Under the pieces are notes generated by a model. That model saw only the letters and a program-made list of their open reading frames with translations, made no database searches and was not told the origin of the DNA. Positions 26,987-53,340 of a stretch of 64,000 nucleotides of DNA are shown here, one piece after another (the stretch's first letter is position 1; every line of letters begins with the position of its first letter). A program made the position numbers and the translations under genes. The DNA is from Chrysemys picta bellii (taxonomy: Eukaryota): assembly GCF_011386835.1 (NCBI RefSeq), contig NC_088809.1, positions 1,488,001 to 1,552,000 on the forward strand, in the 5' to 3' direction.

Positions 26987-29900
26987 TCATACAGGCCTGG
27001 GCAGACTCTCCGCTTCCTTTCTCGGGCGCTTCCTTCCATTTCCTTCCCTCCTCCTCTTCCTCTTGCTGGCAGCTGGGCATGTGGGCTGGAGAGTAGGCAA
27101 AGGCCTTGCCTTCAACTGCCCCCGGTCACTGCTTTCAGCCTGCGCTGCCCCGCGTGGAGTCAGGGTCTCCTCCCCGACGGGGGCATCGTTCAGGATAGCG
27201 TTGAACACATCCTCCTTCCCCGCGAAGTCCAGCACCAGGTGCTTAGGGAGGAGGGAGGCAGTATCTGCAGTGGGGGTGGGCAGCCCCAGCACCTCCGCTT
27301 TGGAATGGACTTTCTTCTTTTTCAGCCCTTTTCCTTTCTTAGTTTTCCTCCCTCTCTTCTTCCCTTTCCCCTTCCGCTGGGTCTTGGCGGGGCTCTCTCG
27401 CTTGGGCCCAGTGGGCGCAGACTTCTGGAAGCTGTCCATAGCCCCTGTGACAACCTGGCCTGGGGGTGGGTGCTTTGTCGGAGGAAGTGCCCATCTGCCC
27501 GTGCTCTCTCTAGGCGGGGGGGTGCCAGGCTGGGGCGCTGGGCTGGAAGGAGCCCTGTCTGAGCCGGCTGCCGCTTCGTCTATCAGTTCCCCACCAAACT
27601 CATAGAGCACCGGCTTCCGGGGCACCGCAATGGCCACGGTGTTGTACTTCTTGCACCTTGAGAGAAGAGGGACGAGAAGCAGAGTGAGGGGGGTGCAGCT
27701 TTGGTGGGGGGCAGGGGAGCACCCCAGGCTCCCTGGTCAGGACTTACCAGATGTACAGATAGGGCTCCACACACTGCTCTTTGTAGGTGAACTCAAAGCA
27801 GGGCACCTGGATCACGTTGAAGAAGGCCTGGCCCACCACGCGGGAGGCAGTGTCATTCACCTGCCTCAGGCAGCCTTTCAACCTGCAAGGGCAACGCAGA
27901 GCATCAGGCAGGGTAAGGAAGGGGCAGGGGGCCTCTCCGGCCGGGCTGAGCTGGGGCAGCAGAGGGAGGAGGTGTCACAGGGACTTCACCCACTCTTGTT
28001 CCTCACACCCTGCCTCTAAGCAAGCTATTGCGGGGTGGCCTTGCTGCTGTTATGGGGAGAGCTGTCCAGTGTCTCCAGCACAAGGCCTTGGGGCCCGAGC
28101 AGCGGGACTTGTTTGGGAGAACTGGCGGGCAGGTTTCCAAACAGGAAACAGCCAACGCGCTCGGTGACGGGGCCTGGAGCGGCTGCCAGCACAGCCCAGA
28201 CGGGAGTCGAGCGCTTTTAGCAGGTCTTTGACGTGGGTAGCATTGTACACCGCATCAGTTAGCTAACCTTACCCTTCTCTGGTCCCTTCCACCAGCGGAT
28301 AAGCTGGTCCTATGCCACAGAGGGGACAGGCTAAGGCCTGGGCTACACTTAACAATTAGATTGGCCTACAAATGTTGTGCCCTGGGTGCTGTGATTGAGT
28401 CAACCAAACCCCCAGGGCAGACGCAGTGAGGTGGACAGGCGACTTCTAGCGCCCGCCTCTTGGAGAGATGGCTTCACTACGTCGATTGGAAAAAACCCTT
28501 CCGCAGGGTCGGAAGCATCTACCCTGCGGCGCTACCACAGCACAGCTGTGTGGACACACCCAGGGGCTGGGTCTTGGCCGAGGTTACAAAGAAACCCAAT
28601 AGCTCCAACCCGCTCTGCAGCCGCCTGTTCTCCAGCGCTGGCTCGGCTCCCTGCTCCGGACAGGTGGGAGGTTAGGGAAATTCCAACCCCTCGCTGCTGC
28701 CCAAGCTCGGTCACTACTTCGTGTTCAACAGAGCAGCGTCTCTCCCCCGCCTCCTCCCGCCGGCTTCCCGTTGCCATCGGCTATGGGCGCCTGGAGCGGC
28801 ACAGACTGGCTTCCCCGGCCAGGGCCCGTACCGCAGGTCGCAGGCGCAGTGGCTGATGGTGTGCCAGCGGAGGTTCCGGTAGCCGTACTTGGCCGTGAAG
28901 GGGTGGATGACGTGCTGACAGTGGTCGTGTTCCCGGCAGCACTCGTCCGTCTCTCGATGTTCTCCTGAGTGGCCGAGGGAGAGAAGGCCTCAGCCCCCCG
29001 CGCCGCACAAGAGCAGCGCGCAGGAGCTGGCCCCAGCTTCAACGCCCGCGGGCTGCCCGCTCTGGGGCTGGCACGGCTGAGGCACCAGGCACCTGGGCTC
29101 TCGGCACATGTAGGGCCCACCTCCCTGCTGCTGCTAGTCTGCCAACGCTGGGTGCTCTGCCCCTGCTGGGGGGCACCAGTTCTGGGGCGGGGGGCATGGC
29201 ACCAACCGCCTTCCAAACTCACGGACGGCCCTGCCCCTCCCTCTTATCCTCGCACCCCTCAAGCACCCTGCACCTCAGCCTGTGCACACCCCCAAACACC
29301 CACACATGCTGCCAACACCCCCAACCCCCCATGCACCCCAACCCCCACACCTCCCACGGACACCCCCAAAACCCCCCCAGACCCAACAACCCCTAACAAA
29401 CCACACCCACACCCCCAACCCCCCACACCCCAAAGACCCCTCCCCCTCCTACACCCCCAACCCCCCACACTCCCAAAGACCCCACACACACACACCCAAC
29501 CCCCCCACACCCAACAACCCCTAACAACCCACACTCACACCCCCAACCCCCCACACCCCCAAAGACCCCTCCCCCTCCCACACACACCCAACCCCCCCAA
29601 AGACCCCACACACACACACCCAACCCCCTCACACCCAACAACCCCTAACAACCCACACCCCCAACCCCCCACGCCCCCAAAGACCCCTCCCCCTCCAACA
29701 CACCCCCAGGCCCCCCAAAGACACCCCCCCACACACACACCCAACCCCCCCACACCCAACAACCCCCAACAACTCCTCCATGCACACACACAACCCCCCA
29801 CACACGGACAGCCCCCCCCAAAAACCCAACCCCCAAAGACCCAACAACCCCCCACACCCCCAACCACTCCCCCATGCACACCCACAACCCCCCACACACA

Positions 29901-30658
29901 ACCCCCCCCACACGGACAGCCCCAAAACCTACCCACACACCCCCAAAGACCCCACCCCTCATGCACACCCCAACACCTCTTCCACACGCACCCCAACTAC
30001 CCCCCACTCACACCCAAACACCTACCCACTGGTTTTCACCGGCCCCGCCCCCCGCGGGGTGTATTGAGTTATCAGCCCCTGAGCACTCCCCCCCCCCCCC
30101 CACCGAGTCTCCCGCCCCCATCCACACTCGACTGGCGGGGGAGAGGGCTGCTGTTTGCGGCTCCCCGCATAGATCTGCTGGGGGAGTCCCGGCCGGCTCC
30201 AGCGCCCCGGGCAGGGCGGGGGGGGGGGGTCCCAGCTCCAGCGCCCCGGGCGGTGCGGGGGGAGTCTCGGAGGGGGGGTCCTGGCGGAGGGGGTCCAGGC
30301 TCCAGCGCCCCGGACGGTGCGGGGGGAGTCTCGGAGGGGGGGTCCCGGCGGGGGGGGGAGTCCCGGCGAGGGGGGGTCCCGTCTCCAGCGCCCCGGCCCG
30401 GCCCTCACCCAGCTGCCCGTAGCTGTCGGCGTTGTTGCCGGCCCCGCACCAGAGGGTGCCCGGGTAGGTGAAGCCCCGCTTGGTCCGTCTGCGAGCGGCG
30501 CCTCCCGCCGGCTCCGGCGCCCACGTGGCGCCCAGCGGCTGCCGCCCGCCCGAGTCCGGGGAGCGGACGGGGGCGCCGGCGGGGTCGGGCTGCCCGGGGC
30601 TCTCGGACCCCTGAGCCGCCGCCAACAAGCACAGGAGCCGCAGCGCCACGGCCCGCAT
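26987..30658 (-). CDS. PROCA1: PROCA1 orthologue / group III secreted phospholipase A2-like protein, 395 aa
   Basis: Exons 30658-30409, 28964-28832, 27882-27748 and 27656-26987 (1188 nt, GT-AG, in frame). Signal peptide [17 protein letters not shown]; RRRTKR|[14 protein letters not shown]; CCREHDHC; HCACD; [10 protein letters not shown]; WCKKY; then a Pro-rich and Lys/Arg-rich tail. It is convergent with SUPT6H, the position PROCA1 occupies. Confidence 0.92.
28335..28561. mobile_element. Harbinger-type MITE in PROCA1 intron 2
   Basis: TAA|GGCCTGGGCTACACTT ... TGTGGACACACCC; degenerate TIR pair of the GTCTACAC/GTGTAGAC family. Confidence 0.5.
29300..30030. repeat. Degenerate C/A-rich minisatellite in PROCA1 intron 1
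   Basis: Reiterated ACACACCCCCAACCCCCCACACCC(C)AAAGACCCC units with almost no G on the + strand. Confidence 0.9.
30178..30400. repeat. G-rich tandem repeat next to the PROCA1 exon 1 donor
   Basis: About four copies of GGGGAGTC(C/T)CGG...CTCCAGCGCCCCGG. Confidence 0.8.
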
Positions 30659-40266: not shown

Positions 40267-42572
40267 GTGGCCCCTGCCCCTTCCACAGTGCCAGGGCACG
40301 GGGATCACCGCTGGGGCAAAGCGAAGGCCGCAGGAGGGGTCAGATGTTGGGCACGTAGCCCAGGGGGCAGTGCCAGTGAAGGGCATGGAACTGGGCGGCT
40401 CAGCGTGGGGAGGGTGCTCCCAATCCGGGGCAGGACTGTGCCAGGCAGCCAGGAGCCGGCCGTGGGCTCCAGATACTTCTCCTGGGGACTGGGTGGGCTT
40501 GGTTCCAGCCCGTGCTCCCCAGGCTCCCGCCCTGGGGGCTGGTCCCAAGAGAGACCCAGGTGCTATTCGGTCCCCTGGCTCTCAGGAGGCTTGCTTGGCT
40601 CAAGCAGTGCTGGCAGGGGGCACCATGGCTCAGGAGTGCTGGGGGAGGGGGAGTCAGGATGTTGATAAGGCGCTTCACTGGGCTCCCCTTCCCTAGGCAG
40701 CAATACCAGGGCTCTGGGGCTCTCTCCGCCCTGCAGGGTCACTAGGGAGGCTCCCTGCTCCCTCTGCAATGAGTCTCCAGGGCCTGTCCAGCACGTGGGT
40801 GCGGGAGGCTTGGGGAAAGTCTGGGGGACGAGCTCGGCCCTGACTTGCGGTGGGCTCGGCTGCCGTGTGCCACCCCAGAGGAGGAGCAGCCGTGTGCAGC
40901 GTGTGGAGGCAGTGACGCGGAGCCGCCGGAGGGCCCGGTGAGTAGAGCACTCAGGCCTGAGCAGGGGTGTGCAGGAAACCAGCTGCCTTTGCCGTCGGAC
41001 AGTCGTGGTCCCAGGCGACCCAGGGTCTGTCTCCGCCAGTCAGAAGCTGGGATTGTCCCCCGTGCAGCCACACGGGTGCGGGAGCAGAGCCTGGGTGCTG
41101 CCCCCGGGGCCAGCCCATGTGCTGCCTGCCGTAGCGACACTGCTGTGGTTACCCAGGCGAGCTTCCACGTTAGCTGGGGGCTGCGATGTGCTGCAGTCGC
41201 TTGCCTGACTACAGGACTGACAGGCCCTGTGTGAACAGGGCTCAGGCCCCGGTGATCCTGGGCTTGCACCGGGCACTTGGGCCACTCACGCAGGGGAAGG
41301 ACACCAGTGTTCTCCCATTGGGAGCTCCAAAGGCTCGTGCGTCCCCTGGCTCTCCCTCCCTTTGGCGTCCTCTCCCTCCTGTCCCTTCTCCCAGGCCGTG
41401 TTCTCCGGGGCTTGCCCTGAGACTGGATGGTGAACAACTCACTGCGAGCTCACCGGCCCTTGGCCCCGGCCTGAGCTTTCCCCAGCTGTTGTTGTCTGTG
41501 ATGGGAGCTTCAGCCGTGTCCAGTTGCACTTTGGCTCTGCAGGGACGTGGGTGTGGCCTGCCTGCTGCCCGTCTTCCAGGGCTCCGAAGCACTGGGACAA
41601 GGGCTCCACAGCAGAGACCCTCCTGCAGGTACTGAGCCAGCTTGGACCCCACTTGGGGGGCATTTAAAGGATGCCTGCTTGGGACACGTTAGTGGGAATG
41701 AGCTGCAGCAGCCCATGGGAAGCGAGGGATACGGGGCAGGAAGGTGGATGAAATGCACCAGGGCTCGGGCTGAAGGACCTGAGGGTTGGCCCAGCCAGGG
41801 CCCCTGGAGCAATCCTGACTGGTCTCCAGGGACTGTGCAGCGCTGCCTGGATGCCAAGGGTCTGGGGGGGTTACTGGGAGGCCAGGCCCCTCCCAGCCTT
41901 ACTCCTCCTCGCTTGTACTAACCAGTAGGAAACTTGACAATGAAAGCTGTTTCCTTGCTGAATGTTGTGTGCGCTCCAGCACGCAGGTTTGTTATTGTAG
42001 GGTTGCTCACAAGCACTGGGCAGCATTGGTTTGTTTTTGTAGGGTTGTTTCCAAGCACTGGTTGGTGTTGGTTTGTTATTGCAGGGTAGCCCCTGACCAT
42101 GGGATCCTGCAGTTGTTTATTTCAGACACTGGAGCACTGAGCCCACCTCCAGCGTCTAGGACTCAGGCCCCGGATGCCAAGTTGTCCAGACTTTGCTCGT
42201 TTTGAGCGGTGAGAGAGCAGCCCGCCGGTAAATGGAGCAGTTGGGTGGCTGGACTCTGCTCCAGACGTGAGGGCCTGGCAGGTACTTCCCGTGCAAAGCC
42301 AGTTCATCCCTGAGCTCGGCTCATCCCGGCTCCTTTCCTGGGGCTCACAGGCTGCTCTGTGGTTCCTGGGCTGCCTGTGAGCCGCAGGCCCCTGCCGTGG
42401 GGGGTCTGCTCTCTGCTCCCATGGGGCACTGCAGTGAGCCGCTTTGCTGGGCGGTAGGAGGTGGGTGAGGTGCCCATTGAGCGTCTCTCCTGCCAGCCAT
42501 GCCAGCGCATTTAGGGCCGACTCTTCTTCCCGTGCAGCTGGTTCCATCCGGGCCCTGCCCCTCCGTGCGCTC

Positions 42573-45500
42573 ATGGACCTGCGGCGTGTTCCCGCCAGCC
42601 GAGAGACGGGATGGTACTTAGCGCTCATGGCTCCGAATGTCAAGGGCCCCAGTTACGCTTGGCTTGACCCCTCCAGGCTGTACTGTCACCGGCAGGTAGG
42701 GCCCCCCACCCCTACCCCCAGTAAGGAAGGGGGCTGCACGTGGCGAGCTTTCTAGCTGCAGGGTTTCTGGGCCCAGGGGTGTGTAGCCGGGGGTGCGGGG
42801 GGGTGGTTAAAGGCCCTGCCTGTTTCCTGGGGAAGAGGAGAGCCAGGAGGGTCACCCGCCCTAGCTAGCCACGCCCCAGCCCCGCGGTGATGGGCACAGC
42901 TGGCCAGGTGAGTGAGCAGGGCCTGCCTGGCACCAGTCTCTGCCAGGCATCCCATGGTGCTGGGCTGGTGGGTTAGTGAGGGGGAGGATGGGCCCCAATC
43001 CCTGGGCATGGAGACCCGGGACACGATGGGCTGCAGCCTCGGACACCTGGGCATGGAAGGCAGCCTAGGGCTCTGCCTTACTGACCCTGCTCCCAGGGCG
43101 TCGCTGGCCGGGCACCTGCTGGCTCTGAGCCGATCAGGGGGACGCAGGCATTACCTGGGCGCTGCCTGGCAGATTGGCTCCCACTGAGCAGAGCAGGAGG
43201 GGACTGGCTGCCTAGCTCTCCCGGCCATGCTGCCTGAGGGGGCTGGCTCGGTGCCAACGCAGGGGCCAGCGGCGTCCCTTCAGAGGGCCTGGGTCCCATG
43301 CCCAGCCACCTAGCGATGAAGTGAGCACCGTCCAGTTAGTGCTGGCATCTCTGCTCCAGACTGGGCGGGCGGGCGGCACCCTCAGCAGCTCTGCCGTCTC
43401 CCCAGGGCCTGCAGGACTGCATTGCGGACCTGCTCCAGCCCTTCTGCGAAGACCCCATCGACCTGGTCGCGGGAATCGACGCCATGGGCTTCATCCTAGG
43501 TAACCCGCCGGCCTCTCCCGGGTGTCTCCTCCCTCGGGGCTAGGGATGGGAGTGTGTGCTGGGGTGAGGGCACCACCTGACCTCCAGTGAACAAAGGGTT
43601 CACCTGGGCGCTGGCCTGCCCTCTCCTTGCTGGGGCGCTCGGGGCAGAGTCTTTTCCCTGTGCTAGCTGGTTACAAGCTCCATTGGCCCCTCCAGGGCTG
43701 TGCCCCATCTCCCAGGGCATCGGTGCCCATTCACTCCTCTGCTTGCCCTTGTGCCAGGCGCTGCCGTAGCCAGCACCCTGCAGAAAGGCTTCCTGGCCAT
43801 CCGCAAAGCCGGACACCTCTGTGTGGAGACCTGCACGCAGCCCTACACCGACTACTCGGCCCGCCAGAAGCTGCTGGAGATGAGGACGGACGCCATCCAG
43901 CCAGGTGAGAGCTGCGGCAGGCACGGCCAGCAGCCCCCGGGCTCTGGTGCCTGGCTACTGCCCTCGGGCGCTGCCACCCATCTTCTGTCCTGTGGGAAGG
44001 GCCCTCCCCTCGAACTCACCTAAGCATGGGCCCAGCACCCCCTCTACGCCTCACCTGCTCCAGGTGCCTAGCTCCATGGCAGAGCTCCCAGAGAGCAGCA
44101 GAGCACCTCCCTGGCATCCCACGGGCACCGTTACTGCCTGTCTGAGGGCTCTGCCCCAGCCCGAGTCTGTCTGTTGGGCTGCAGGTAACGGCATCAAGGC
44201 GCCAGCAGAGGGAGGGGTCTGTGGGGAGAAACCCACCTAACCGAGCCCTTGCACCCCAGGTCTGCGTGTCTTACTGGTGGACCAGTGGATTGAAACGGGG
44301 GGAACCATGCGCGCTGCCATCCAGCTGGTGGAGCAGCAAGGGGGAGTGATTGCAGGTAGGGGGCAGCATGATGCATGGGGCGGGGGGCTGGCCAAAGGGC
44401 TGTGATCACGCCCAGCCTGGACCCTGGCGGGGCAGGAAACAGAGCCACCTGGACAAGGCGATCGCTGGGCGTGGGAAATGTTGGAAGAGTCTCAGGTTTT
44501 TCCTTAACCAACATTTCCCCTGAGAAGTTTCCAACCCAAACCCCAGAATGTTGGACTGAAATGTTTGAAATCTCCGTGTTGGTGATGAAAACCAGAAACC
44601 TTTTCACAACTGAAACGTCCCCAGCACTGGGCCAGCCATTGTGTCATTAAACCCCTCATCTGGGTTCACACAGTGGAGCGGGTGTAGAGGTCTCCACAGT
44701 GCTGCGGGGGCACCCACCTGGGTGGGGCAGACTTGAGAAGGGCATGAGCCCCCTCCCCCATTATCACACAGGCCCCTCTCAGAGGGTAGCTGGCCCTCTG
44801 AAGGAGTCAGGGCCACCTGCCTCTGACAGGCTCCACACGGGGTAACGAGGCAACTCAGGTTCACCTGGGACTAGGGGAACTCCTGGAGGTGCTGGGACGG
44901 GAGGCCGTTAATTAGGCAGGGAAACACCTGGGCAAGCTAAAAAGGAGGCTCTGGGCCATGTGGGACAGAGGAGAGAGGCTCTGGGCGAGAGGCCCAGTTC
45001 CCAGAATAAGAGAGCTCCCACGGGGAGGGCGTCAGGAGGAAGCTGGTGATGGGGCTCACCCAGAAGGGAAATTGAGGAAGAGCGGGCCTGGTGGGAGAGG
45101 CTTTGAAAGGGAGGTGCTACGAATGCCACAGCTCAGCAGACCCTAGCCCATGCAAGGACTTCAGCCGGTAGCAGCAGAAGCCCCAGAGCACAGGAATTAC
45201 TGTCTCGAGGCAGGATCGTTGTGGTTTGTCCCCTGTGCGGACCCTTCCCCTAGCTGATGACAAGCCCTGGCTCCGGAAGCGGGGTCTGGGTCAAGAGAGC
45301 CTTGCTGGGGAGGGATCTGGATGGACATAAGTGGGGCTGATGGACTAAGATTACCTCTGCCCCCCACGGCTTCACCTCCTGGGTCTCCCCCCATAATGCA
45401 ACTGGTCACTCATGCAGTGTTGGGCCCGGGCTGTCTCCTGGGGCGAGAGCACAGGCTGGCGTGCGTCATTGACAGCGCTGGTTAGTTCTTGCCATGTGGG

Positions 45501-45873
45501 GGCTGCTGCCCATCCTTGGCAGTGCCCAGCAGAGGGTGGCACCCCCCCCACAGCGACTGGCACGGGGAGTGTGGACGCAGCTGTGCCAACAGCAATGCAG
45601 CCTTCCCGCCACGGCCCCTCCCCAGGCACTGCCCAGCTCAGCCAGCACTGAGCTCGAGGGCCTCTGGTTGTCCGGTCCCCGCCGTAACCCCCCCACTCTA
45701 CTCCCTGTCGCACAGGCATCGCTGCCATCTGCATCGAGGACAGTGAGGGAGGCAAGTGGATCCAGGAGCATTACAAGTGTTCACAGTGTGTCCCCCAGCA
45801 CCTGATGCCCCAATTCAACAGGCACCAGCTGGAGTCCTTCCAGGCCTTTGGGGCCACGCCTGGCCAGGCATAA
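42573..45873 (+). CDS. Adenine phosphoribosyltransferase-like type I PRTase, 205 aa (a paralogue, not canonical APRT)
   Basis: Exons 42573-42695, 43406-43499, 43758-43904, 44260-44355 and 45716-45873 (618 nt, GT-AG, in frame, TAA). Protein: MDLRRVPASRETGWYLALMAPNVKGPSYAWLDPSRLYCHRQGLQDCIADLLQPFCEDPIDLVAGIDAMGFILGAAVASTLQKGFLAIRKAGHLCVETCTQPYTDYSARQKLLEMRTDAIQPGLRVLLVDQWIETGGTMRAAIQLVEQQGGVIAGIAAICIEDSEGGKWIQEHYKCSQCVPQHLMPQFNRHQLESFQAFGATPGQA. It carries APRT-family motifs VAGIDAMGFILG, GFLAIRKAG and the PRPP loop VLLVDQWIETGGT. Confidence 0.92.
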
Positions 45874-46613
45874 TTAATGGGATCTCCTGCCCTGCAGCTG
45901 AGCCTTGCACCAAGGTGCCCTGGACCACCTGCTCCATGGCCCGTGGGTTGTCCCTGCTCCCAGAGGCCGGAAGGGAGGGGTCACAGCTTCCAGAAGAGCT
46001 GCTTCCCCTCCCCCACCCCAGTCTAATCCAATTAAGCCATGTAACCCTTACTAATCACAGATGCCCTCCTGCGCCCTCCAGAATGGCTGCATCACGTGGG
46101 CAGGGACAGTGCTCAGACACCAGCTGCGCCCCTGCGTCTGGGGAGCAATCTCACCACTTGCTGCTGCGTATCAAACCTGCCCCACGCCGGCCCCCACCTC
46201 TGCCAACACCCCCACCCAGCTGCTGCCCTGGGGAGCCCTAGGTCGCCTCCCTGAAGTCTGTTACTCCCTGAGAGCAGAAGGAAATCTTGGTCTGGGCATG
46301 GCCCAGCTCCCTGCTGGCAGCGCCCCCAGCGTCTGTCTGAAATCAGGCACGCTGCTCCTTCTTCCTCTGGCTGGCTGGGCGCTCAGCTGCTGTGCGGTCA
46401 GTGTGCCGGGGGGATGGGGCTGCAGCCCCAAGCTGCTTCCTCCTTGTTCGGATGCCCCTCACACCGGCCCCCCGCCCCCCAGCAGCTCCCACCCTGCCGA
46501 GGCTTCACAGAATGCTTCGCACCCTCGCTCCCAGGGGAAATCCGGCCAGCACTGCTCCCCACACCCCCAATCACTGGGTATTTTATTTTTTTTAAAAAGC
46601 GTAGAAATTCGGC

Positions 46614-47308: not shown

Positions 47309-50300
47309 TCAGCGGCAGCACTTGGATTTCTTCCTCTGCGCCGTCAGGTACAGGTCGCTGTCCGTGCTGTGAATCCCTAGGAAAGCAGCACACGTGGGAT
47401 CCCGGGAAGTACAGTGAGCGCCCCAGCCCCCTCCAGTGCCACAGAGACCTTCGCCCGGGCTGCCAGCTCCAAGCCTGCCGGGGTCGGGAGTGCCACCAGC
47501 TGTTCCCAGCTGCCCACTTGCAGCTCCCGTGGGAAGCTGGCTGCGGTTCTCAGCTCAAGCCTAGGGGCCGGGGCTGCGCTCTCCCCCAGAGCCGGAGGGT
47601 CCCCCTAGGGCAGCACCAGGCGGGTTGCAGGGCGTGGGGAGGAGCCTGGCCCTGCCCCTGCTCTTGGTTACCTAGCGGAGCCAGCCCAGCGCTAGATGCC
47701 CCCGGGCGTCAGCTCAATGTACAGTGGTGGTGCTAGCTGGGATCCCAGCGGCCGCGAGGTGGATACTCACGCACGACGTCCCCGATCTTCCTGGCGCTGC
47801 TCTTCTCCAGCTCGGCCAGCACGCTGCTCTCGAAGGTCAGCGAGGCCACGCGGAAAAAAAACTCCCTCACGTTCTCCCCTGCCCAGAGAGTCGACAGTGA
47901 CCCCTCCGTCCCTGGCTCCCAGCCCCAGGGATGTGCCAGTGCTGGGACCGTACTCTGGGGTACACCGAGCCGTGGGCAGCTGCGTGGTCACCGCCTGCCA
48001 GCAGTGAGCCGTGCCCAGGGCGATGCCCACAGAGGGGCAGAGGGCGCTCGGTGTCTGAGGCTGGCACAGGCACGAGTGTGCTGAGGGGAGGTCTGGGGGC
48101 AGGAATGCAGAGCGTGGGGGTGGGGGGCAAAGGTGGGGGTGGTCAGACCCCTCAACAGTGATGCCAGCTGGGAAAACTGGGCTATGCTTCAGCCCTGGGG
48201 GCACCAGGCCTCCACTCTAGGGGGCCGAGAGAGGCAGCAGCCAGGGGCACCTCTCCCCTCTGACCCCCCCTCATCACAGCCTGCCCCGGCACTCACCGGT
48301 GAGCGAGGAGACAGCCCAGTACTCCGCCCGCATCTCCTTGGCCACCTTGATGGCGTCTCTCTCCAGGAGGCTGTACTGTGCAGGCAGCTGCGGGAGGAGA
48401 CAGGAGGTCACCGCCTGAGCCCTGGGACCAGCCCCATGGCAGGAGTGCTGGGGGGACGGCTCCTGGGGGCTGGCTGGGACAGACAGGGGGATGGAAGGCA
48501 GCTCCATGGCCTAGATCGACCCCAGGGCTCTGTCCTAGGGAGTTTGCTGAGTCGAGCCCCCCAGGACAATGAGGGGTGGCCCCAGGCTCTCCCCGGCAAG
48601 CACCATTCAGCTTGGGGGGGCTGGGACCCACACTCACACTCAGATCCTTCTTCGAGCCCACCAGGAAGAGGATCACGTTGGAGGGGTCATTCTCCTTCAG
48701 GGCGTCGGCCAGCCACTGCCTGGAGGGCGAGAGAGGCCATTAGCCGGGGAGGCAGGCGGGGCCCTGGGCTCTGAGACTTTGCCCACTCAGCCTGGCCCTA
48801 GGGATGGCAGCAAACAGCCCCCCAGCTCAGCCCTACCCCCGGCCCCCCACCTTCAGCCCCCGCATGGCCCAGTGCCTGCACCCAACCCCCACACCCTGAC
48901 CTACAGCCTGGTCCCCTTACGCCTCGAGTCCCCCACCCCAGGCCCCAGCCCCCTGCGCCTCCCCCAGGTCCCAGCCCCCTGCGCCCCCCCAGGCAGACCT
49001 CTAGAAATCCTCACTTGTCAGTTACAAACCCTGCTCCCCCCCCTGCCCTCTGGCTCTACTGGCTGCCATCTTCCCTCCCCTCTGCCCAGACCCTCTTGGC
49101 TGCCATTGCCCTGAGCGCCCCCCCCCCCCGCTCGCTGCCCCTCCCCACCCTACACTGCCATCACCCCTGCCCCCGGCAACCAACCCCGCTCCCTGCAAGA
49201 AGAGTCCCTTCGCCCTCTGAGCTGGCGTTACCGTACCTGGTGTGCGCTAGAGACGCCACGTCGTTCACGTCGAACACAATCACTATCGCTGGGGGGAGAG
49301 CGAGAGGAGGTGAGAGACGGGGGGCTGGGGGGACCCAACACAGGGCTGAGAGGGACCCCACAAACCCTGTGTGCTTGTTATCGAGAGCACCAGCCTGTGC
49401 TTGGCGTAGGGCCGATAGTTCGCACTGGGCCTGCAGGGGCCAGATTGTTATGGAAGGGCCACGTGTTTGTTATGGTAGGGTTGCCGGCAGGGCGCTGTGT
49501 TTGTGATTTTAGGGTTTATTGCAGCAGGCTGCTCATTAGGACTGGGGTACAAGCTCTTGGCGCCCCGCACACTCCTGGACCCTGGCCCTCACCTTGTGCT
49601 CCGCGGTAGTAGGTGGATGCGATGCACTTGAACCTCTCCTGGCCGGCCGTGTCCCACCTGGGGAGAGGGGCAGCGGGTTAGCTGTGGCTGTGACGGGAGG
49701 GCCGAGAGGCTGGGCTGAGCCGGTACTCACAGCTGTAAGCTGAAGGGGACGCCGAGCACCTCAAAGCGCTCCATCTCGAAGTCCACCCCGATGGTCGCCT
49801 TGTAGTTCTTATCGAATGTGTCCTTGCAGAACCTGCGGGGGAGACCCAGCCGGTGGAGCTGGGGGGTCAGCATACAAAGGGCCGGCCCCCTGGGGCTTCC
49901 TGCCAGGGACCCAGGGACCCACCACTGAAATGCAACCCCCTCTTGGGTGCGACACAGCAGCTGGGTACCAGCTGCTCCCCAGTGAGATACCACTGGGAGA
50001 GGACGTGAAGGAACAGTCTGTGTCTAGCTAACTGCCAAGGGAGGACTCGGGGAGCCAGTGTCCTAAGCAGCCCACGATGGGGTATTAGTTCTGTCCTGAC
50101 AGGGGAAAACTGCTCAACCGACTCACCTGGATTCTCCTGGGACTCTCCCATCCAAGCAATAAACAGGCCGAGCTCTACGGAGCTGACAAGCCCGGAGCCT
50201 CAGGGGGCCAGACCCTGATCCTGCTCTTGGACAAGTCGACACGTTCCCGGGCAAACCTCCCCGAAAAGCCCCCCTAAAGCAGCGCCAGAAGCAAACGGGA

Positions 50301-53300
50301 AGTGGGGACACCCCATAGCACCGACTCGGGGGCTGGGGGGTCAGCCTGGGGATCAGGGGTGTCTGGAACAGTCTAGGCCACTGGCTGACTCCCCATAGCC
50401 CCGGAGAGCAGGGACCGCGTCTCCTGTGTGTCTGCGCAGTGCCTTGCACAGTGGGGCCTGGCCCTGAGATAATAAACGACACTTCCCCCCTCCCAGAGAG
50501 GGGCCTTTCCCCCTTCCTGGGGCCCTGGCAGCGCAGTCCCGCCCACCCCCAGGCAGCCCCACCTACCGGTTGATTAAGCAGGTCTTGCCCACTGACAGGT
50601 CTCCCACCACGATGATCTTGGAGATCTTAAACCTGCTGGGGAGAGCCGGGCACGTCGCTGTCAGCTGTGAGCTCCCGTCCCCCACCCAGGATGGGCAGCG
50701 CCAGCTCCCACAGCTGGTGGCCGGGCCAGCAGCCTCCCCCCCAAGGGGCCATGGGACGGTTTGGTGTCTCCAGTGCTTGCACTCGCTGCCATGCTGAGCG
50801 GGTGCTCCCAGGGCTCCCTGCCCATTCCCAGTGCACGCCAGCTTCCACTGGGGTACTGAGTAATCGCCGGAGCAGCTGTCTCCTGGTAACCTCAGACACC
50901 CAGGCAGGCTCCTCCATCTGCTCAGGAAGCTAACGAGTCCAGGCAATTAGCCTCCCCTCCTCCAGGTGTTTGTCAAAAGCAGCCTGCTCGGAAACCTCAA
51001 CCTCACCTTCCCCCCGCGCACCCCGTCCTGCTGCTCCCCCCGTGCACCCCATTTCTCCCCCCGCGCACCCCGCCCCGCTGCTCCCCCCACGCCCCATCCT
51101 GCTGCTCCCCCCACACACCCCATTTCTCCCCCCATGCACCCTGTCCCACTGCTCTCCCCATGCACCCCGTCCCACTGTTCCCCCTGCACACCCCGTCCCA
51201 CTGTTCCCCCCTGCGCACCCCATTTCTCCCCCCGCACACCCTGTCCCGCTGCTCCCCCCATGCACCCCGTCCTGCTGCTCCCCCCACGCACCCCATTTCT
51301 TCCCCCAGGCACCCCATTCCGCTGCTCCCCCCACGCACCTCACCCTGCTGCTCCCCCCATGCACCCTGCGCCACTGCTCCCCCCACGCACCCTGTCCCGC
51401 TGCTCCCCCCATGCATCCCATTTCTCCCCCCGCGCACCCTATCCCGCTGCTCCCCCCATGCACCCCATTTCTCCCCCCGCGCACCCTATCCTGCTGCTCC
51501 CCCATTCACCCCATTTCTCCCCCCATGCACCCTGTCCCACTGCTCCCCCCATGCACCCCATTTCTCCCCCCGCGCACCCTATCCTGCTGCTCCCCCATTC
51601 ACCCCATTTCTCCCCCCATGCACCCTATTCCGCTGCTCCCCCCATGCACCCTGTCCCGCTGCTCCCCCCGCGCACACCGTCCTGCTGCTCCCCCACGCAC
51701 CCCATCTCTCCCCCATGCACCCCGCCCCGCTGCTCCCCCTGCATACACTGCCCCGCTGCTCCCCCCATGCACCCCACCCCATAGCCCTTTTGCTTTTACA
51801 GATCTGGACATTGGACCTGGCTGCAGCTTCCCCCAGACTCCATCCAACAGGGAGGCCAGACAATGCGGATGACCCGCAGGCGGTTTCCAGGCTCCCGACC
51901 CCCTTGCCCACGGCAGGCAGGCCAGGCACTTTGTAAAGGGACTTTAGGGAGACTCCGAGTCGAGTCCTGGGGCAGCAGCAATGTGGAGCAGCCCCCGGTC
52001 ACAGAGTGGGGACCAGCACCGCGATGCTGGGGAGCTGGCAGGGCGACCAGCCCCAGGCTCAGACGGTGCCGGTTTCCCTGAGCGCTGTACTGGGGAGCCA
52101 GCGCACGGCATCTCCCACTGAGCCCCCCAGTCACCTCCAGCAGCAAGTCCGAGGGTTGCCCTGCTCTGGGCTCCTCCTCCCAGCTGCTCACTGCCACAGG
52201 CTTGGGCACAGGCCTTCCCGCTCCCTCCCAGCACGCAGCTCTGAGCCGGGCAGGGCTGGGGTTCCCCTCGGCTGCTGAGCCAGAGGGAGGCAAGGATGCA
52301 CCTAGCTCCCTCTGCCTTGCTCTTCTGGCTCCTGGGGGATTTCAGGCCAACCCTTCTCATTAACCCAAGGCAGGACCCCCACCTCCTCCCCTTCCCCTCC
52401 CCAGCACATTCCTGCAATGTGAGTAAGCTCCAGACATGCCCCAGCACGCAGGGCTCTTAAAGAGACACTGCTCAGCCCTCCCCGGCTGCTGGGAAAAACC
52501 AAAGCAGCCTGATTGGGTTCCATTCCATTCCGAAAACTGGCCCTGGCACCAAACCGGGCTCGGGCCTGGGCTGGCTCAGGGCAGTCGTGATGAGGTCCCC
52601 AGGATCCGGGGCATGCTGCTGCCTGCCGGGAGCTCCTTAAAGGGCTCTGTCCCTTCCCTTGGGAGGCGGGAGTTCCCCGGGGCCCAGCACGGCTTACCCC
52701 ACTGTCCCCGTTCGCTGCTCCTGGCAGGCGCCGCTTACTTGGGGATGAAAGCTGGAGCGCGAATGGAGGGCGGCCTCTTTGTGAAAGCACTGAAATGGGA
52801 GCACAGACAGTGAGCTGGCAGCTCCTGGGAAGTCGGCAGTGCCCGCTAACGGCTCCCCCAAAGAGAGCGCGAGCGGGAATGCCCCCGGAGCCTGCCCAGA
52901 ACAGCCAGCCACATACCCTGCAACACCCAGCCCGGAGCCTGCCCAGAACAGCCAGCCACATACGCTGCGACACCCAGCGCCCTGCGGCTCTCCCTAGCTC
53001 GGCTGGCTGAGAGGGGATGGACAGCCTGTGGCAGGGACCACACACGGAGCAGTCCCAGCTGAGGGGGAGGGGTGGGGAGCTGCCACCACGTCAGCCAGAC
53101 GGAGGACAAGCTGGGGAGAACCCGCTCAGCACCCCCAACAATCCCCCCGGCTCGCGCTTCACAGGTGCAGCAGAACCCGGAGAGCTTGGCTCCTTCCCTG
53201 GCTCTGATACTCTTCTTCCCTTGGGCCCGCGCGGGTATCCATCACCCTCCCCTAGCCCCGCCTCGAAGCACTGGCCTGCTTACCTGAGGCAGCTCCGCAA

Positions 53301-53340
53301 TGATCCGGTCCCTCCGGACTGGTGCTAGCACACTCATCAT
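47309..53340 (-). CDS. RAB34: Ras-related protein Rab-34, 260 aa
   Basis: Exons 53340-53284, 52789-52698, 50632-50567, 49832-49731, 49657-49593, 49288-49237, 48719-48638, 48387-48297, 47878-47771 and 47376-47309 (783 nt, in frame). [19 protein letters not shown]; G1 GDLSVGKT; TIGVDF; WDTAGQERF; the RAB34/36-type VGSKKDL; C-terminal KCCR*. Confidence 0.97.
51009..51780. repeat. C-rich degenerate minisatellite in a RAB34 intron
   Basis: Alternating subunits of about 16-17 bp: TGCTCCCCCCATGCACCC, CATTTCTCCCCCCGCGCACCC and TGTCCCGC. Confidence 0.92.
52884..52977. repeat. 47-bp tandem duplication
   Basis: CCCGGAGCCTGCCCAGAACAGCCAGCCACATAC(C/G)CTGC(A/G)ACACCCAG, two copies. Confidence 0.85.

What the first reader, a model, noticed from the sequence alone, without database searches (positions are those of the whole stretch)
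42573..45873. APRT-like phosphoribosyltransferase with a rewired active site, in a block where I know of no human gene
Seen: an intact 5-exon, 205-aa type I PRTase gene between PROCA1 and RAB34. Known: canonical APRT has a PRPP loop of the form V(V/I)VDDLLATGGT and a catalytic flexible loop with Y-x-LEYG, while 6-oxopurine PRTs use EDIIDTG. Here the PRPP loop is VLLVDQWIETGGT (second acidic residue replaced by Gln, a Trp inserted, and Glu where APRT has Ala and HPRT has its catalytic Asp). The flexible loop is YTDYS, and the N-terminal hood (GWYLALMAPNVKGPSYAWLDPS) differs from APRT. Inference: this is a distinct enzyme family that probably does not use adenine in the usual way, retained in non-mammalian vertebrates and lost in mammals. 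It could be an uncharacterised nucleobase-salvage or modification activity.
Basis: partly seen in the sequence, partly recalled or inferred. Interest (0 to 1): 0.75.

Follow-up and report, generated by a model that had tools for sequence, protein, structure and literature searches.

The report
Expressed, divergent APRT-like gene in turtle
This turtle gene between PROCA1 and RAB34 is real, transcribed and under selection. It belongs to an uncharacterised branch of the adenine-phosphoribosyltransferase superfamily with a changed active site, and its bacterial and protist relatives are always paired with a BtpA-type TIM-barrel enzyme in pyrimidine-breakdown gene clusters.

Summary
A 205-aa ORF in five GT-AG coding exons lies between PROCA1 and RAB34. 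Contigs from four public runs are spliced at exactly these four introns and add a non-coding 5' exon.

The gene is the orthologue of the database-annotated but unstudied "adenine phosphoribosyltransferase-like" gene (zgc:174895). Named members come from hagfish, shark, teleosts, coelacanth, lungfish, amphibians, reptiles, birds and acorn worms. None of about 150 named hits is a mammal.

Evidence that it is not ordinary APRT:
- dN/dS is 0.13-0.18, and intron positions are shared with hemichordates.
- The fold is APRT-like, but every NCBIfam APRT model scores below its cut-off.
- The pyrophosphate-loop Arg is Met, the PRPP loop reads DQWIETGGT, and the hood Phe-Arg is Trp-Leu.
- In trees the "DQW" clade (animals, marine protists, marine proteobacteria) separates from canonical APRT.

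New here: in 79 of 80 bacterial loci, and in the multi-domain non-animal members in hand (protists such as Diplonema among them), this domain is fused to or directly follows a BtpA-family TIM barrel. The surrounding clusters often carry UPRT, URC1-like, DUF1688/URC4, a deaminase and an ABC transporter. A role on a pyrimidine-derived ribotide is therefore more likely than adenine salvage, but this is inferred. No partner was found for animals, and loss in mammals is not proven.

The parts
41388..41628 (+). Non-coding 5' exon. The 3' end at 41628 is exact; the 5' end is only approximate.
   Evidence: Joint 41628|42538 (GT..AG) appears in contigs of all four runs, and depth begins in the 41388-41584 bin. 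An in-frame stop and the absence of any ATG make it untranslated in this frame.
42538..42695 (+). Exon carrying 35 nt of 5' UTR and coding exon 1 (ATG at 42573; residues 1-41, including the N-terminal 'hood').
   Evidence: Residues 13-38 are invariant or nearly so across 13 vertebrates.
42609..42674 (+). Hood segment GWYL..AWLDPS. Trp-Leu stands where canonical APRT has Phe-Arg.
   Evidence: position 30 is W in 100% of animal members and F in 86% of canonical APRT; position 31 is L against R.
43406..43499 (+). Coding exon 2 (94 nt).
   Evidence: The exon is the same length in Carettochelys, gecko, budgerigar and the acorn worm Glandiceps.
43472..43492 (+). Pyrophosphate-loop equivalent GIDAMGF. 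Met replaces the conserved Arg of canonical APRT.
   Evidence: alignment to 4m0k: GIESRGF; position 68 is M in 100% of animal members and R in 93% of canonical APRT.
43758..43904 (+). Coding exon 3 (147 nt), with IRKAGHLCVET and the flexible-loop equivalent.
43844..43858 (+). Flexible-loop motif YTDYS. It corresponds to APRT Y-x-L-E-Y-G and is one residue shorter; Asp-Tyr stands for Glu-Tyr.
44260..44355 (+). Coding exon 4 (96 nt), the PRPP-loop exon.
44268..44306 (+). PRPP loop VLLVDQWIETGGT.
   Evidence: Q130 and W131 are 100% conserved in the DQW clade (66 sequences); E133 is 100% in animal members and 91% in the others. The 5'-phosphate-binding TGGT is retained.
45716..45873 (+). Coding exon 5 (158 nt with TAA), including a C-terminal extension beyond the APRT core.
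   Evidence: AF2 predicts confident helices up to about residue 198 in the orthologue.
45874..46500 (+). 3' UTR. It runs at least to the end of the stretch that was laid.
   Evidence: Spliced contigs continue to 46500 in all four runs (tables 2 and 8).
27569..30493 (-). Upstream neighbour PROCA1 (group III PLA2-like exons).
   Evidence: tblastn of bird and gecko ORFs. The orthologous genes carry PF05826.
47729..53340 (-). Downstream neighbour RAB34.
   Evidence: Ras/Arf Pfam hits in the orthologous loci.

Best explanation
Shown: this is the turtle orthologue of the vertebrate 'APRT-like' gene (zgc:174895). It is a transcribed, selectively constrained 205-aa protein with the type I phosphoribosyltransferase (APRT) fold. 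It belongs to a distinct 'DQW' clade of the APRT superfamily that also holds hemichordate, marine protist and marine proteobacterial members.

Inferred: it is an enzyme that still grips a ribose-5-phosphate group, because the TGGT phosphate loop, the first loop Asp, the Arg-Lys pair and the loop Tyr are kept. Its pyrophosphate/metal side is altered (Arg to Met, second Asp to Gln). Its base pocket is altered too (Phe-Arg to Trp-Leu, Leu to Trp, Ala to Glu). It therefore probably makes or cleaves the N-glycosidic bond of a 5-phosphoribosyl compound other than AMP. The invariant Glu lies at the position of the HPRT catalytic Asp by the motif register (from memory, not tested here) and is a candidate acid/base.

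Outside animals the domain is always fused to, or translationally coupled with, a BtpA-family phosphate-binding TIM barrel. It sits in clusters with UPRT, URC1-like, DUF1688/URC4, a CDA-fold deaminase, a PuuE-like hydrolase and a Pot-type ABC transporter. The most likely substrate class is therefore a pyrimidine-derived (ureido or ring-opened) ribotide of a URC-type nitrogen-salvage route. In animals the gene stands alone. Whether a partner exists elsewhere in the genome is unknown.
For: - Gene model and motifs.
- Spliced transcripts in four runs from four studies.
- Start codon.
- Orthologues from hagfish to birds and in two hemichordates.
- Identical internal exon sizes (94/147/96 nt) in the acorn worm, and dN/dS of 0.13-0.18.
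- Synteny with PROCA1/RAB34 in turtle, gecko, bird and teleost.
- APRT-like fold (AF2 pLDDT 95; Foldseek TM 0.7-0.8, 26-34% identity to APRTs).
- Below all NCBIfam APRT cut-offs (best 109.8 against 170; 102.4 against 125).
- Bacterial APRT 4m0k scores 90 bits and human APRT 56 bits.
- Clade-specific residues.
- DQW clade is one side of a branch at SH-aLRT 100, and at 86/96 with the motif columns removed, with animals at 99/95.
- BtpA-like gene fused or adjacent in 79 of 80 bacterial loci spanning Alpha- and Gammaproteobacteria.
- The same N-terminal domain in every non-animal multi-domain member in hand, Diplonema and Amoebophrya among them.
- Cluster content (Pot-type ABC 59-65 loci, CDA 39, PuuE-like 33, UPRT 24, URC1-like 21, DUF1688 20, DUF1989 9).
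- The partner models as a phosphate-binding TIM barrel nearest to TrpA, ribulose-phosphate epimerase, MJ1099 with PRPP, and PRAI.
- URC pathway roles of URC1, URC4 and URC6: PMC7530994.
Against: - No biochemical data exist for any member. The literature searches found nothing.
- The pyrimidine link rests on bacterial gene neighbourhood only. URC1/URC4/UPRT lie within 8 kb in only about a quarter of loci, mostly Gammaproteobacteria.
- No animal member carries a BtpA-like domain, and none lies in the window or in four orthologous loci. The one search for an animal partner was filled by bacterial hits. The animal protein may therefore have a different job from its microbial kin.
- Loss of the Arg and of the second Asp could equally mean loss of catalysis.
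- The structure model is of the Carettochelys orthologue (86% identical), not of the window protein itself.
- No ligand docking or pocket inspection was possible.
Confidence: 0.55

Rival explanations
1. It is simply a second adenine phosphoribosyltransferase isozyme. It would salvage adenine with PRPP despite the changed motifs, and mammals dispensed with it.
For: All the best sequence, family and fold matches are APRTs. The Arg-Lys pair, the loop Tyr, the hood Asp, the first PRPP-loop Asp and the TGGT phosphate loop are kept. Databases name it APRT or APRT-like.
Against: It scores below every curated APRT equivalog cut-off. The pyrophosphate Arg is Met. The second acidic residue is an invariant Gln. 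The base-stacking Phe-Arg of the hood is Trp-Leu, and Ala is Glu. It forms a separate clade from canonical APRT. Its bacterial kin sit beside pyrimidine genes rather than purine genes and are tied to a TIM-barrel partner that no APRT needs.
Confidence: 0.12
2. It is a catalytically inactive PRT-fold protein, a ligand sensor or regulator in the manner of PurR or PyrR. It would bind PRPP or a nucleotide without turning it over.
For: The residues lost (pyrophosphate-loop Arg, second loop Asp) are ones that canonical type I PRTs use for PPi/Mg binding (established knowledge; positions). The PurR PRT domain appears among the PDB and NCBIfam hits.
Against: The replacements themselves are strictly conserved from bacteria to birds (Q130 and W131 at 100%; E133 at 100% in animals and 91% in the other members), which points to a new function rather than decay. 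There is no DNA- or RNA-binding domain. Microbial members are fused to an enzyme-type TIM barrel inside catabolic operons with a transporter. dN/dS of 0.13-0.18 fits either reading.
Confidence: 0.15
3. It is a purine PRT with switched specificity (hypoxanthine, xanthine, guanine or an oxidised or modified purine). It would use the loop Glu as HPRT uses its Asp.
For: The Glu in D-Q-W-I-E-T-G falls at the position of the catalytic Asp in the HPRT E-D-I-I-D-T-G motif (motif register from knowledge; Glu conservation). There are weak hits to the archaeal HPT and XPRT models.
Against: Those hits are far below cut-off (44.5 against 200; 23.6 against 177). No purine-catabolic genes were seen in the bacterial clusters, whereas UPRT, URC1-like, DUF1688 and a CDA-fold deaminase recur.
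Confidence: 0.1

Closest known systems
Canonical adenine phosphoribosyltransferase (APRT/Apt, EC 2.4.2.7; e.g. PDB 4m0k, 2dy0, 1ore)
   Same: It has the type I PRT fold of similar size (TM 0.7-0.8). It shares the IRK-G-L segment, the loop Tyr, the hood Asp, the first PRPP-loop Asp and the TGGT 5'-phosphate loop. It is 26-34% identical.
   Different: It falls below all APRT equivalog cut-offs. Arg is Met in the PPi loop. The PRPP loop reads DQWIE where APRT has DDLLA (bacterial DDLIA). The hood has Trp-Leu instead of Phe-Arg. The flexible loop is one residue shorter, with Asp for Glu. There is a C-terminal extension of about 25 residues. The genomic locus differs and the clade is separate.
Bacterial 'D[D/E]WIETG[A/S]Q' APRT-like proteins of about 173 aa (uncharacterised; annotated as adenine phosphoribosyltransferase)
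   Same: This is the nearest outgroup in the trees. It shares Trp and Glu in the PRPP loop, DYS in the flexible loop and, mostly, a non-Arg residue (Leu) in the PPi loop.
   Different: It keeps an acidic second residue (D or E, not Q). The loop ends in A/S-Q rather than G-T. It lacks the WYL...AWLDPS N-terminal segment. No BtpA coupling was seen in the one locus inspected; one member is fused to a GNAT domain.
BtpA~PRT fusions and gene pairs of marine proteobacteria and protists (e.g. MAG protein MEJ2177434.1, named 'BtpA/SgcQ family protein'; Diplonema papillatum KAJ9467344.1)
   Same: They belong to the same DQW clade, with the same VDQWIETGGT, DA(M/A)GF and WYL..AWLDP motifs. They are 34-49% identical to the turtle orthologue.
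   Different: They are always fused to, or directly preceded by, a BtpA-like TIM barrel and lie in transporter and pyrimidine-catabolic clusters. The animal gene is a stand-alone, intron-bearing gene with no such domain.
URC6/Upp uracil phosphoribosyltransferase of the URC uracil-catabolic pathway
   Same: It is also a PRT encoded beside URC1-like and URC4-like genes (PMC7530994).
   Different: The bacterial clusters already encode a canonical UPRT (PF14681, 244 bits), so the DQW protein is not the URC6 equivalent. It gives only a sub-threshold UPRTase hit (16 bits).

Membership tests
Type I phosphoribosyltransferase superfamily (Pfam PF00156) | Pfam Pribosyltran hit above the gathering score | tested here: met
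   Orthologues P0002, P0135 and P0039 score 37.8, 43.5 and 35.3 bits against a cut-off of 26.3. The window's exon 4 alone scores 22.7 bits. The spliced window protein could not be submitted because it has no reference.
Type I phosphoribosyltransferase superfamily (Pfam PF00156) | Rossmann-like PRT core fold with a hood | tested here: met
   The AF2 model of orthologue P0002 has pLDDT 95.1. The top 48 Foldseek PDB hits are APRTs, followed by XPRT.
Canonical APRT (NCBIfam TIGR01090, NF002632-NF002636) | Score at or above the curated equivalog cut-off | tested here: not met
   Best scores are 109.8 against 170, 102.4 against 125, 95.5 against 224 and 95.1 against 185.85. The coelacanth and chicken orthologues behave the same way.
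Canonical APRT | PPi-loop Arg in G-x-(D/E)-(S/A)-R-G-F | tested here: not met
   The window has GIDAMGF. Position 68 is M in 100% of animal members and R in 93% of canonical sequences.
Canonical APRT | PRPP loop with two acidic residues followed by L/I-L/I-A-T-G-G-T | tested here: not met
   The window has V-D-Q-W-I-E-T-G-G-T.
Canonical APRT | Flexible-loop Glu-Tyr catalytic pair | tested here: inconclusive
   Tyr is kept. Glu is Asp in animals and Asn in many bacterial DQW members, and the loop is one residue shorter.
Canonical APRT | 1:1 orthology with human APRT (tree and synteny) | tested here: not met
   It lies in the SUPT6H-PROCA1-x-RAB34-RPL23A block. It forms a separate clade from canonical APRT sequences. 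Human APRT scores only 56 bits. No vertebrate APRT sequence could be put into the tree.
Canonical APRT | Adenine + PRPP to AMP + PPi activity | not testable with these tools
   This needs an enzyme assay.
Vertebrate 'APRT-like' / zgc:174895 orthologue group (DQW clade, animal branch) | Groups with the named orthologues, with the same exon structure and the same neighbours | tested here: met
   It is 96-97% identical to the Gopherus and Mauremys proteins and 86% to Carettochelys. The animal clade has 99/95 support. Exons are 123/94/147/96/158 nt, as in Carettochelys and gecko. RAB34 is adjacent in turtle, gecko, bird and teleost.
BtpA-coupled DQW phosphoribosyltransferases (microbial) | BtpA-like TIM barrel fused or encoded immediately upstream | tested here: not met
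   No BtpA-like domain occurs in any animal member, and none in the 64-kb window or in four orthologous loci. A partner elsewhere in the genome could not be searched for.
6-oxopurine PRT (HPRT/XPRT) | Family model above cut-off | tested here: not met
   Archaeal HPT scores 44.5 against 200 and XPRT 23.6 against 177.

The most novel reading that the evidence does not exclude
The gene is the animal survivor of a previously undescribed two-part enzyme system: a BtpA-type phospho-sugar TIM barrel plus a 'DQW' phosphoribosyltransferase. This system would process a pyrimidine-derived or urea-bearing ribotide. It is widespread in marine proteobacteria and protists, was present in the deuterostome ancestor (possibly by ancient transfer from marine bacteria) and was dropped in mammals. 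Under this reading, non-mammalian vertebrates have a nucleotide-metabolic reaction with no mammalian counterpart.
Probability: 0.25. Interest if true: 0.8.

Novelty: new variant of a known kind. Interest (0 to 1): 0.6.

Why it matters
Nucleotide salvage in vertebrates is usually treated as a closed list of enzymes. This conserved, expressed PRT-fold gene is present from hagfish to birds, has a systematically changed active site and has no described function in the literature searched. That points to a reaction missing from vertebrate metabolic maps, one that mammals apparently do without.

The microbial link found here gives concrete starting points for experiments. It names candidate substrates (uracil- and cytosine-derived ribotides such as phosphoribosylurea). 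It offers tractable bacteria for genetics, such as Gemmobacter aquatilis DSM 3857 and Mameliella alba. It also bears on the still unresolved middle steps of the URC pathway and on the unknown biochemical role of the BtpA/SgcQ family. Finally, it flags systematic mis-annotation: both this family and its BtpA-like partners are labelled 'adenine phosphoribosyltransferase' in public records.

Tried and rejected
- The spliced 205-aa window protein has no reference, so it was never sent to a remote tool. Exon references, a stop-free open frame around exon 3 (window:43667-44020, region 32-79) and orthologue ids were used instead. The structure model is therefore of orthologue P0002.
- Literature searches for zgc 174895, 'adenine phosphoribosyltransferase-like', BtpA/SgcQ with PRT, and URC terms gave nothing on this family. 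Searches were badly posed and wasted.
- The search for an animal BtpA-like partner, using the N-domain of the protist fusion P0156, returned 120 bacterial hits and no answer.
- tblastn of BtpA-like proteins against the window and four orthologous loci found nothing.
- I tested the idea that the SDR gene next to the hemichordate orthologues matches the SDR of the bacterial clusters. It was rejected for lack of specific similarity.
- I tested the idea that the long N-terminal extensions of some database isoforms hide a BtpA domain. It was rejected: hmmsearch found no hit in any animal sequence, and the goby extension has no BtpA-like domain and reads like a mis-joined gene model.
- The context of the sister D[D/E]W clade was uninformative.
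- Rfam found nothing in the 5' region.
- No HPRT, XPRT or vertebrate APRT sequence was available by reference, so the tree has canonical APRT-type sequences of unnamed origin only and no outgroup.
- Two long-branch rows (P0268, P0279) were left out of the second tree.
Full report
**Observation.** Every intron is GT..AG. The quoted motifs are all there. Exon 4 alone hits Pfam Pribosyltran.

Contigs from four public runs, belonging to four studies and two organism labels, were laid on 40600-46500. All four coding introns are removed at exactly the predicted sites. There is also a further upstream exon ending at 41628, joined to 42538. Contigs that skip GT..AG introns can only come from RNA, so the gene is transcribed. 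The contigs of two runs match the window's exons with no or one mismatch each. The joined 5' exon carries an in-frame stop and no later ATG, so 42573 is the start codon of the main transcript.

**Identity and distribution.**
- A word search using the stop-free frame around exon 3 returned turtle, crocodilian, lizard, bird and pike proteins named 'adenine phosphoribosyltransferase-like'.
- The full-length Carettochelys orthologue (P0002, 86% identical to the window protein) then found the family in tuatara, snakes, frogs, salamanders, a caecilian, lungfish and coelacanth, where it is named zgc:174895.
- The window protein is 96-97% identical to the Gopherus and Mauremys proteins, so the genome is that of a cryptodiran turtle.
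- An exhaustive profile search, followed by cluster look-ups, added a shark, a hagfish and two acorn worms.
- No mammal appears among about 150 named hits, although more distant lineages do. This fits loss in mammals but does not prove it, because the lists are truncated and no mammalian genome could be searched.

**Locus.** The window order is SUPT6H, PROCA1 (minus strand), this gene (plus strand), RAB34 (minus strand), RPL23A. The same order, with annotated Pfam content, is seen in budgerigar, gecko and Carettochelys. A teleost has gene-RAB34-TLCD1. The gene has therefore sat beside RAB34 since at least the bony-vertebrate ancestor. From my own knowledge, this is not the APRT locus.

**Constraint.** CDSs rebuilt from the orthologous loci have the same exon sizes: 123/94/147/96/158 nt in the other turtle and in the gecko. 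The three internal exons (94/147/96) are identical in the acorn worm, so the introns predate the split between hemichordates and vertebrates. Nei-Gojobori dN/dS is 0.18 against Carettochelys, 0.16 against budgerigar and 0.14 against gecko.

**Relation to APRT.** The best solved relatives by sequence are all APRTs: bacterial 4m0k at 90 bits and human 1ore at 56 bits. An AlphaFold model of P0002 (pLDDT 95) superposes on APRT structures at TM 0.7-0.8 and 26-34% identity. Yet every NCBIfam APRT equivalog model scores below its curated cut-off in turtle, coelacanth and chicken.

Column statistics over 122 aligned sequences show what differs. Human APRT residue numbers below are from memory.

| Site | This clade | Canonical APRT |
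|---|---|---|
| Hood (human F26-R27) | Trp-Leu | Phe-Arg |
| PPi loop (human R67) | Met (Met or Ala in microbial members) | Arg |
| PRPP loop | D-Q-W-I-E-T-G-G-T (Gln and Trp invariant in all 66 members; Glu 100% in animals, 91% in the others) | D-D-L-L-A-T-G-G-T (bacterial D-D-L-I-A) |
| Flexible loop | Asp-Tyr in animals, often Asn-Tyr in bacteria; one residue shorter | Glu-Tyr |

Kept in this clade are the hood Asp, the Arg-Lys pair, the loop Tyr, the first loop Asp and the TGGT phosphate loop. The Arg-to-Met change was missed.

**Phylogeny.** A maximum-likelihood tree of 74 domain sequences puts all DQW sequences on one side of a branch (SH-aLRT 100). They sit next to a bacterial clade of about 173-aa proteins with D-(D/E)-W-I-E-T-G-(A/S)-Q, and away from canonical APRT-type sequences. 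Removing the PRPP-loop and PPi-loop columns and using the careful search keeps the DQW branch (86/96) and an animal clade (99/95). Limits: there is no outgroup, the canonical sequences are of unnamed origin, and there are few columns.

**Microbial kin and the functional lead.**
- Several non-animal representatives are 430-1160 aa long and carry an N-terminal BtpA-family domain. Named ones include Diplonema papillatum and Amoebophrya.
- A scan of one genome per bacterial species gave 80 loci in marine Alpha- and Gammaproteobacteria: Rhodobacterales including Gemmobacter aquatilis and Mameliella alba, SAR116, Arenicellales and sponge symbionts.
- In 21 loci the protein is a BtpA~PRT fusion. In 57 a BtpA-like gene of about 248 aa sits just upstream on the same strand, in most cases overlapping or within a few tens of bases. 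In one locus it lies 7 kb away. The single exception sits at a contig end.
- The partner models confidently (pLDDT 95) as a phosphate-binding TIM barrel. It is nearest to tryptophan synthase alpha, ribulose-phosphate epimerase, MJ1099 (solved with PRPP) and phosphoribosylanthranilate isomerase.
- Around the pair lie a PotABCD-type ABC transporter (59-65 loci), a CDA-fold deaminase (39), a PuuE-like polysaccharide-deacetylase-fold protein (33), a canonical uracil PRT (24), a URC1-type 'GTP cyclohydrolase II' (NF005536, 706 bits; 21), DUF1688/URC4 (20) and DUF1989 (9).
- In yeast, URC6 (a UPRT), URC1 and URC4 degrade uracil via ribosylurea to urea and 3-hydroxypropionate, and the intermediate steps are uncharacterised (PMC7530994).
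- Because these clusters already hold a canonical UPRT, the DQW protein is not its equivalent.

**Mechanism.**
- Shown: an APRT fold, a retained 5'-phosphate loop, an altered PPi side and base pocket, and strict conservation of the new residues.
- Inferred: the protein makes or breaks the N-glycosidic bond of a 5-phosphoribosyl compound other than AMP. The invariant Glu is a candidate acid/base at the position used by HPRT. In microbes the protein works hand in hand with the BtpA-like barrel on a pyrimidine-derived ribotide. One candidate is phosphoribosylurea or a ring-opened UMP product, in analogy with the PRT-plus-isomerase logic of TrpD/TrpF.
- For the turtle gene this is extrapolation. 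No animal member has the barrel, none lies nearby, and the one search for a partner elsewhere was uninformative.
- Rivals are a plain APRT isozyme, an inactive ligand-binding protein, and a purine PRT with switched specificity.

**Novelty.** The gene model is already in RefSeq and UniProt under a misleading name. I found no paper on its function in the library searched. Its separateness from APRT, the full set of active-site changes, its reach beyond vertebrates and the obligate BtpA coupling are, as far as these tools show, undescribed. I rate it a new variant of a known kind, with interest 0.6.

No human or mammalian sequence was consulted.

Noticed in passing
window 41985-42100: About 2.5 tandem copies of a 42-nt unit (GGTTTGTTATTGTAGGGTTGCTCACAAGCACTGG...) lie in the intron between the 5' exon and coding exon 1. 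Many RNA-run contigs from elsewhere end in or run through it (loose ends at 41986-42087), so it is a dispersed, transcribed repeat. There was no Rfam match.
   Followed up: partly
window 42615 and 46102: In all four runs a low-depth contig (3-4x) joins 42615 to 46102, with 36 foreign letters between and non-canonical AC..GC ends. It is probably another transcript sharing short matches rather than a splice form. It remains unexplained.
   Followed up: no
window 42080-42247: One run (X4, depth 10) joins the 5' exon (41628) to about 42085 instead of 42538. This suggests a minor alternative exon.
   Followed up: no
window 44356-45715 (intron 4): Low but continuous contig coverage (depth 2-10 against 40-460 on the exons) runs across the 1.36-kb last intron in three runs. 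This fits pre-mRNA or some intron retention.
   Followed up: no
L005-L084 (bacterial loci): A conserved cluster occurs in marine Alpha- and Gammaproteobacteria: UPRT, CDA-fold deaminase, BtpA-like + DQW-PRT, a PotABCD-like ABC transporter, URC1-like, DUF1688/URC4, a PuuE-like hydrolase, DUF1989 and sometimes an SDR or 2-hydroxyacid dehydrogenase. It looks like a bacterial URC-type pyrimidine utilisation locus with two extra, uncharacterised enzymes.
   Followed up: partly
P0301, P0308, P0400, P0404: Stand-alone BtpA/SgcQ-family TIM-barrel proteins of Rhodobacteraceae are named 'adenine phosphoribosyltransferase' in NCBI records. This is probably annotation carried over from the fusion proteins.
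   Followed up: no
L003 and L086 (hemichordate loci): In both acorn worms a short-chain dehydrogenase gene lies divergently upstream of the orthologue. It shows no specific similarity to the SDR of the bacterial clusters.
   Followed up: yes
P0149, P0111, P0140, P0038, P0040, P0046: Several database isoforms carry long, non-conserved N-terminal extensions, and none of them holds a BtpA-like domain. These look like gene-model artefacts. The conserved protein starts at the Met of MDL...
   Followed up: partly
P0154 (Siedleckia nematoides transcriptome): A vertebrate- or hemichordate-like member sits in the transcriptome of an apicomplexan-like parasite of polychaetes. It could be host contamination or a real protist copy.
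   Followed up: no
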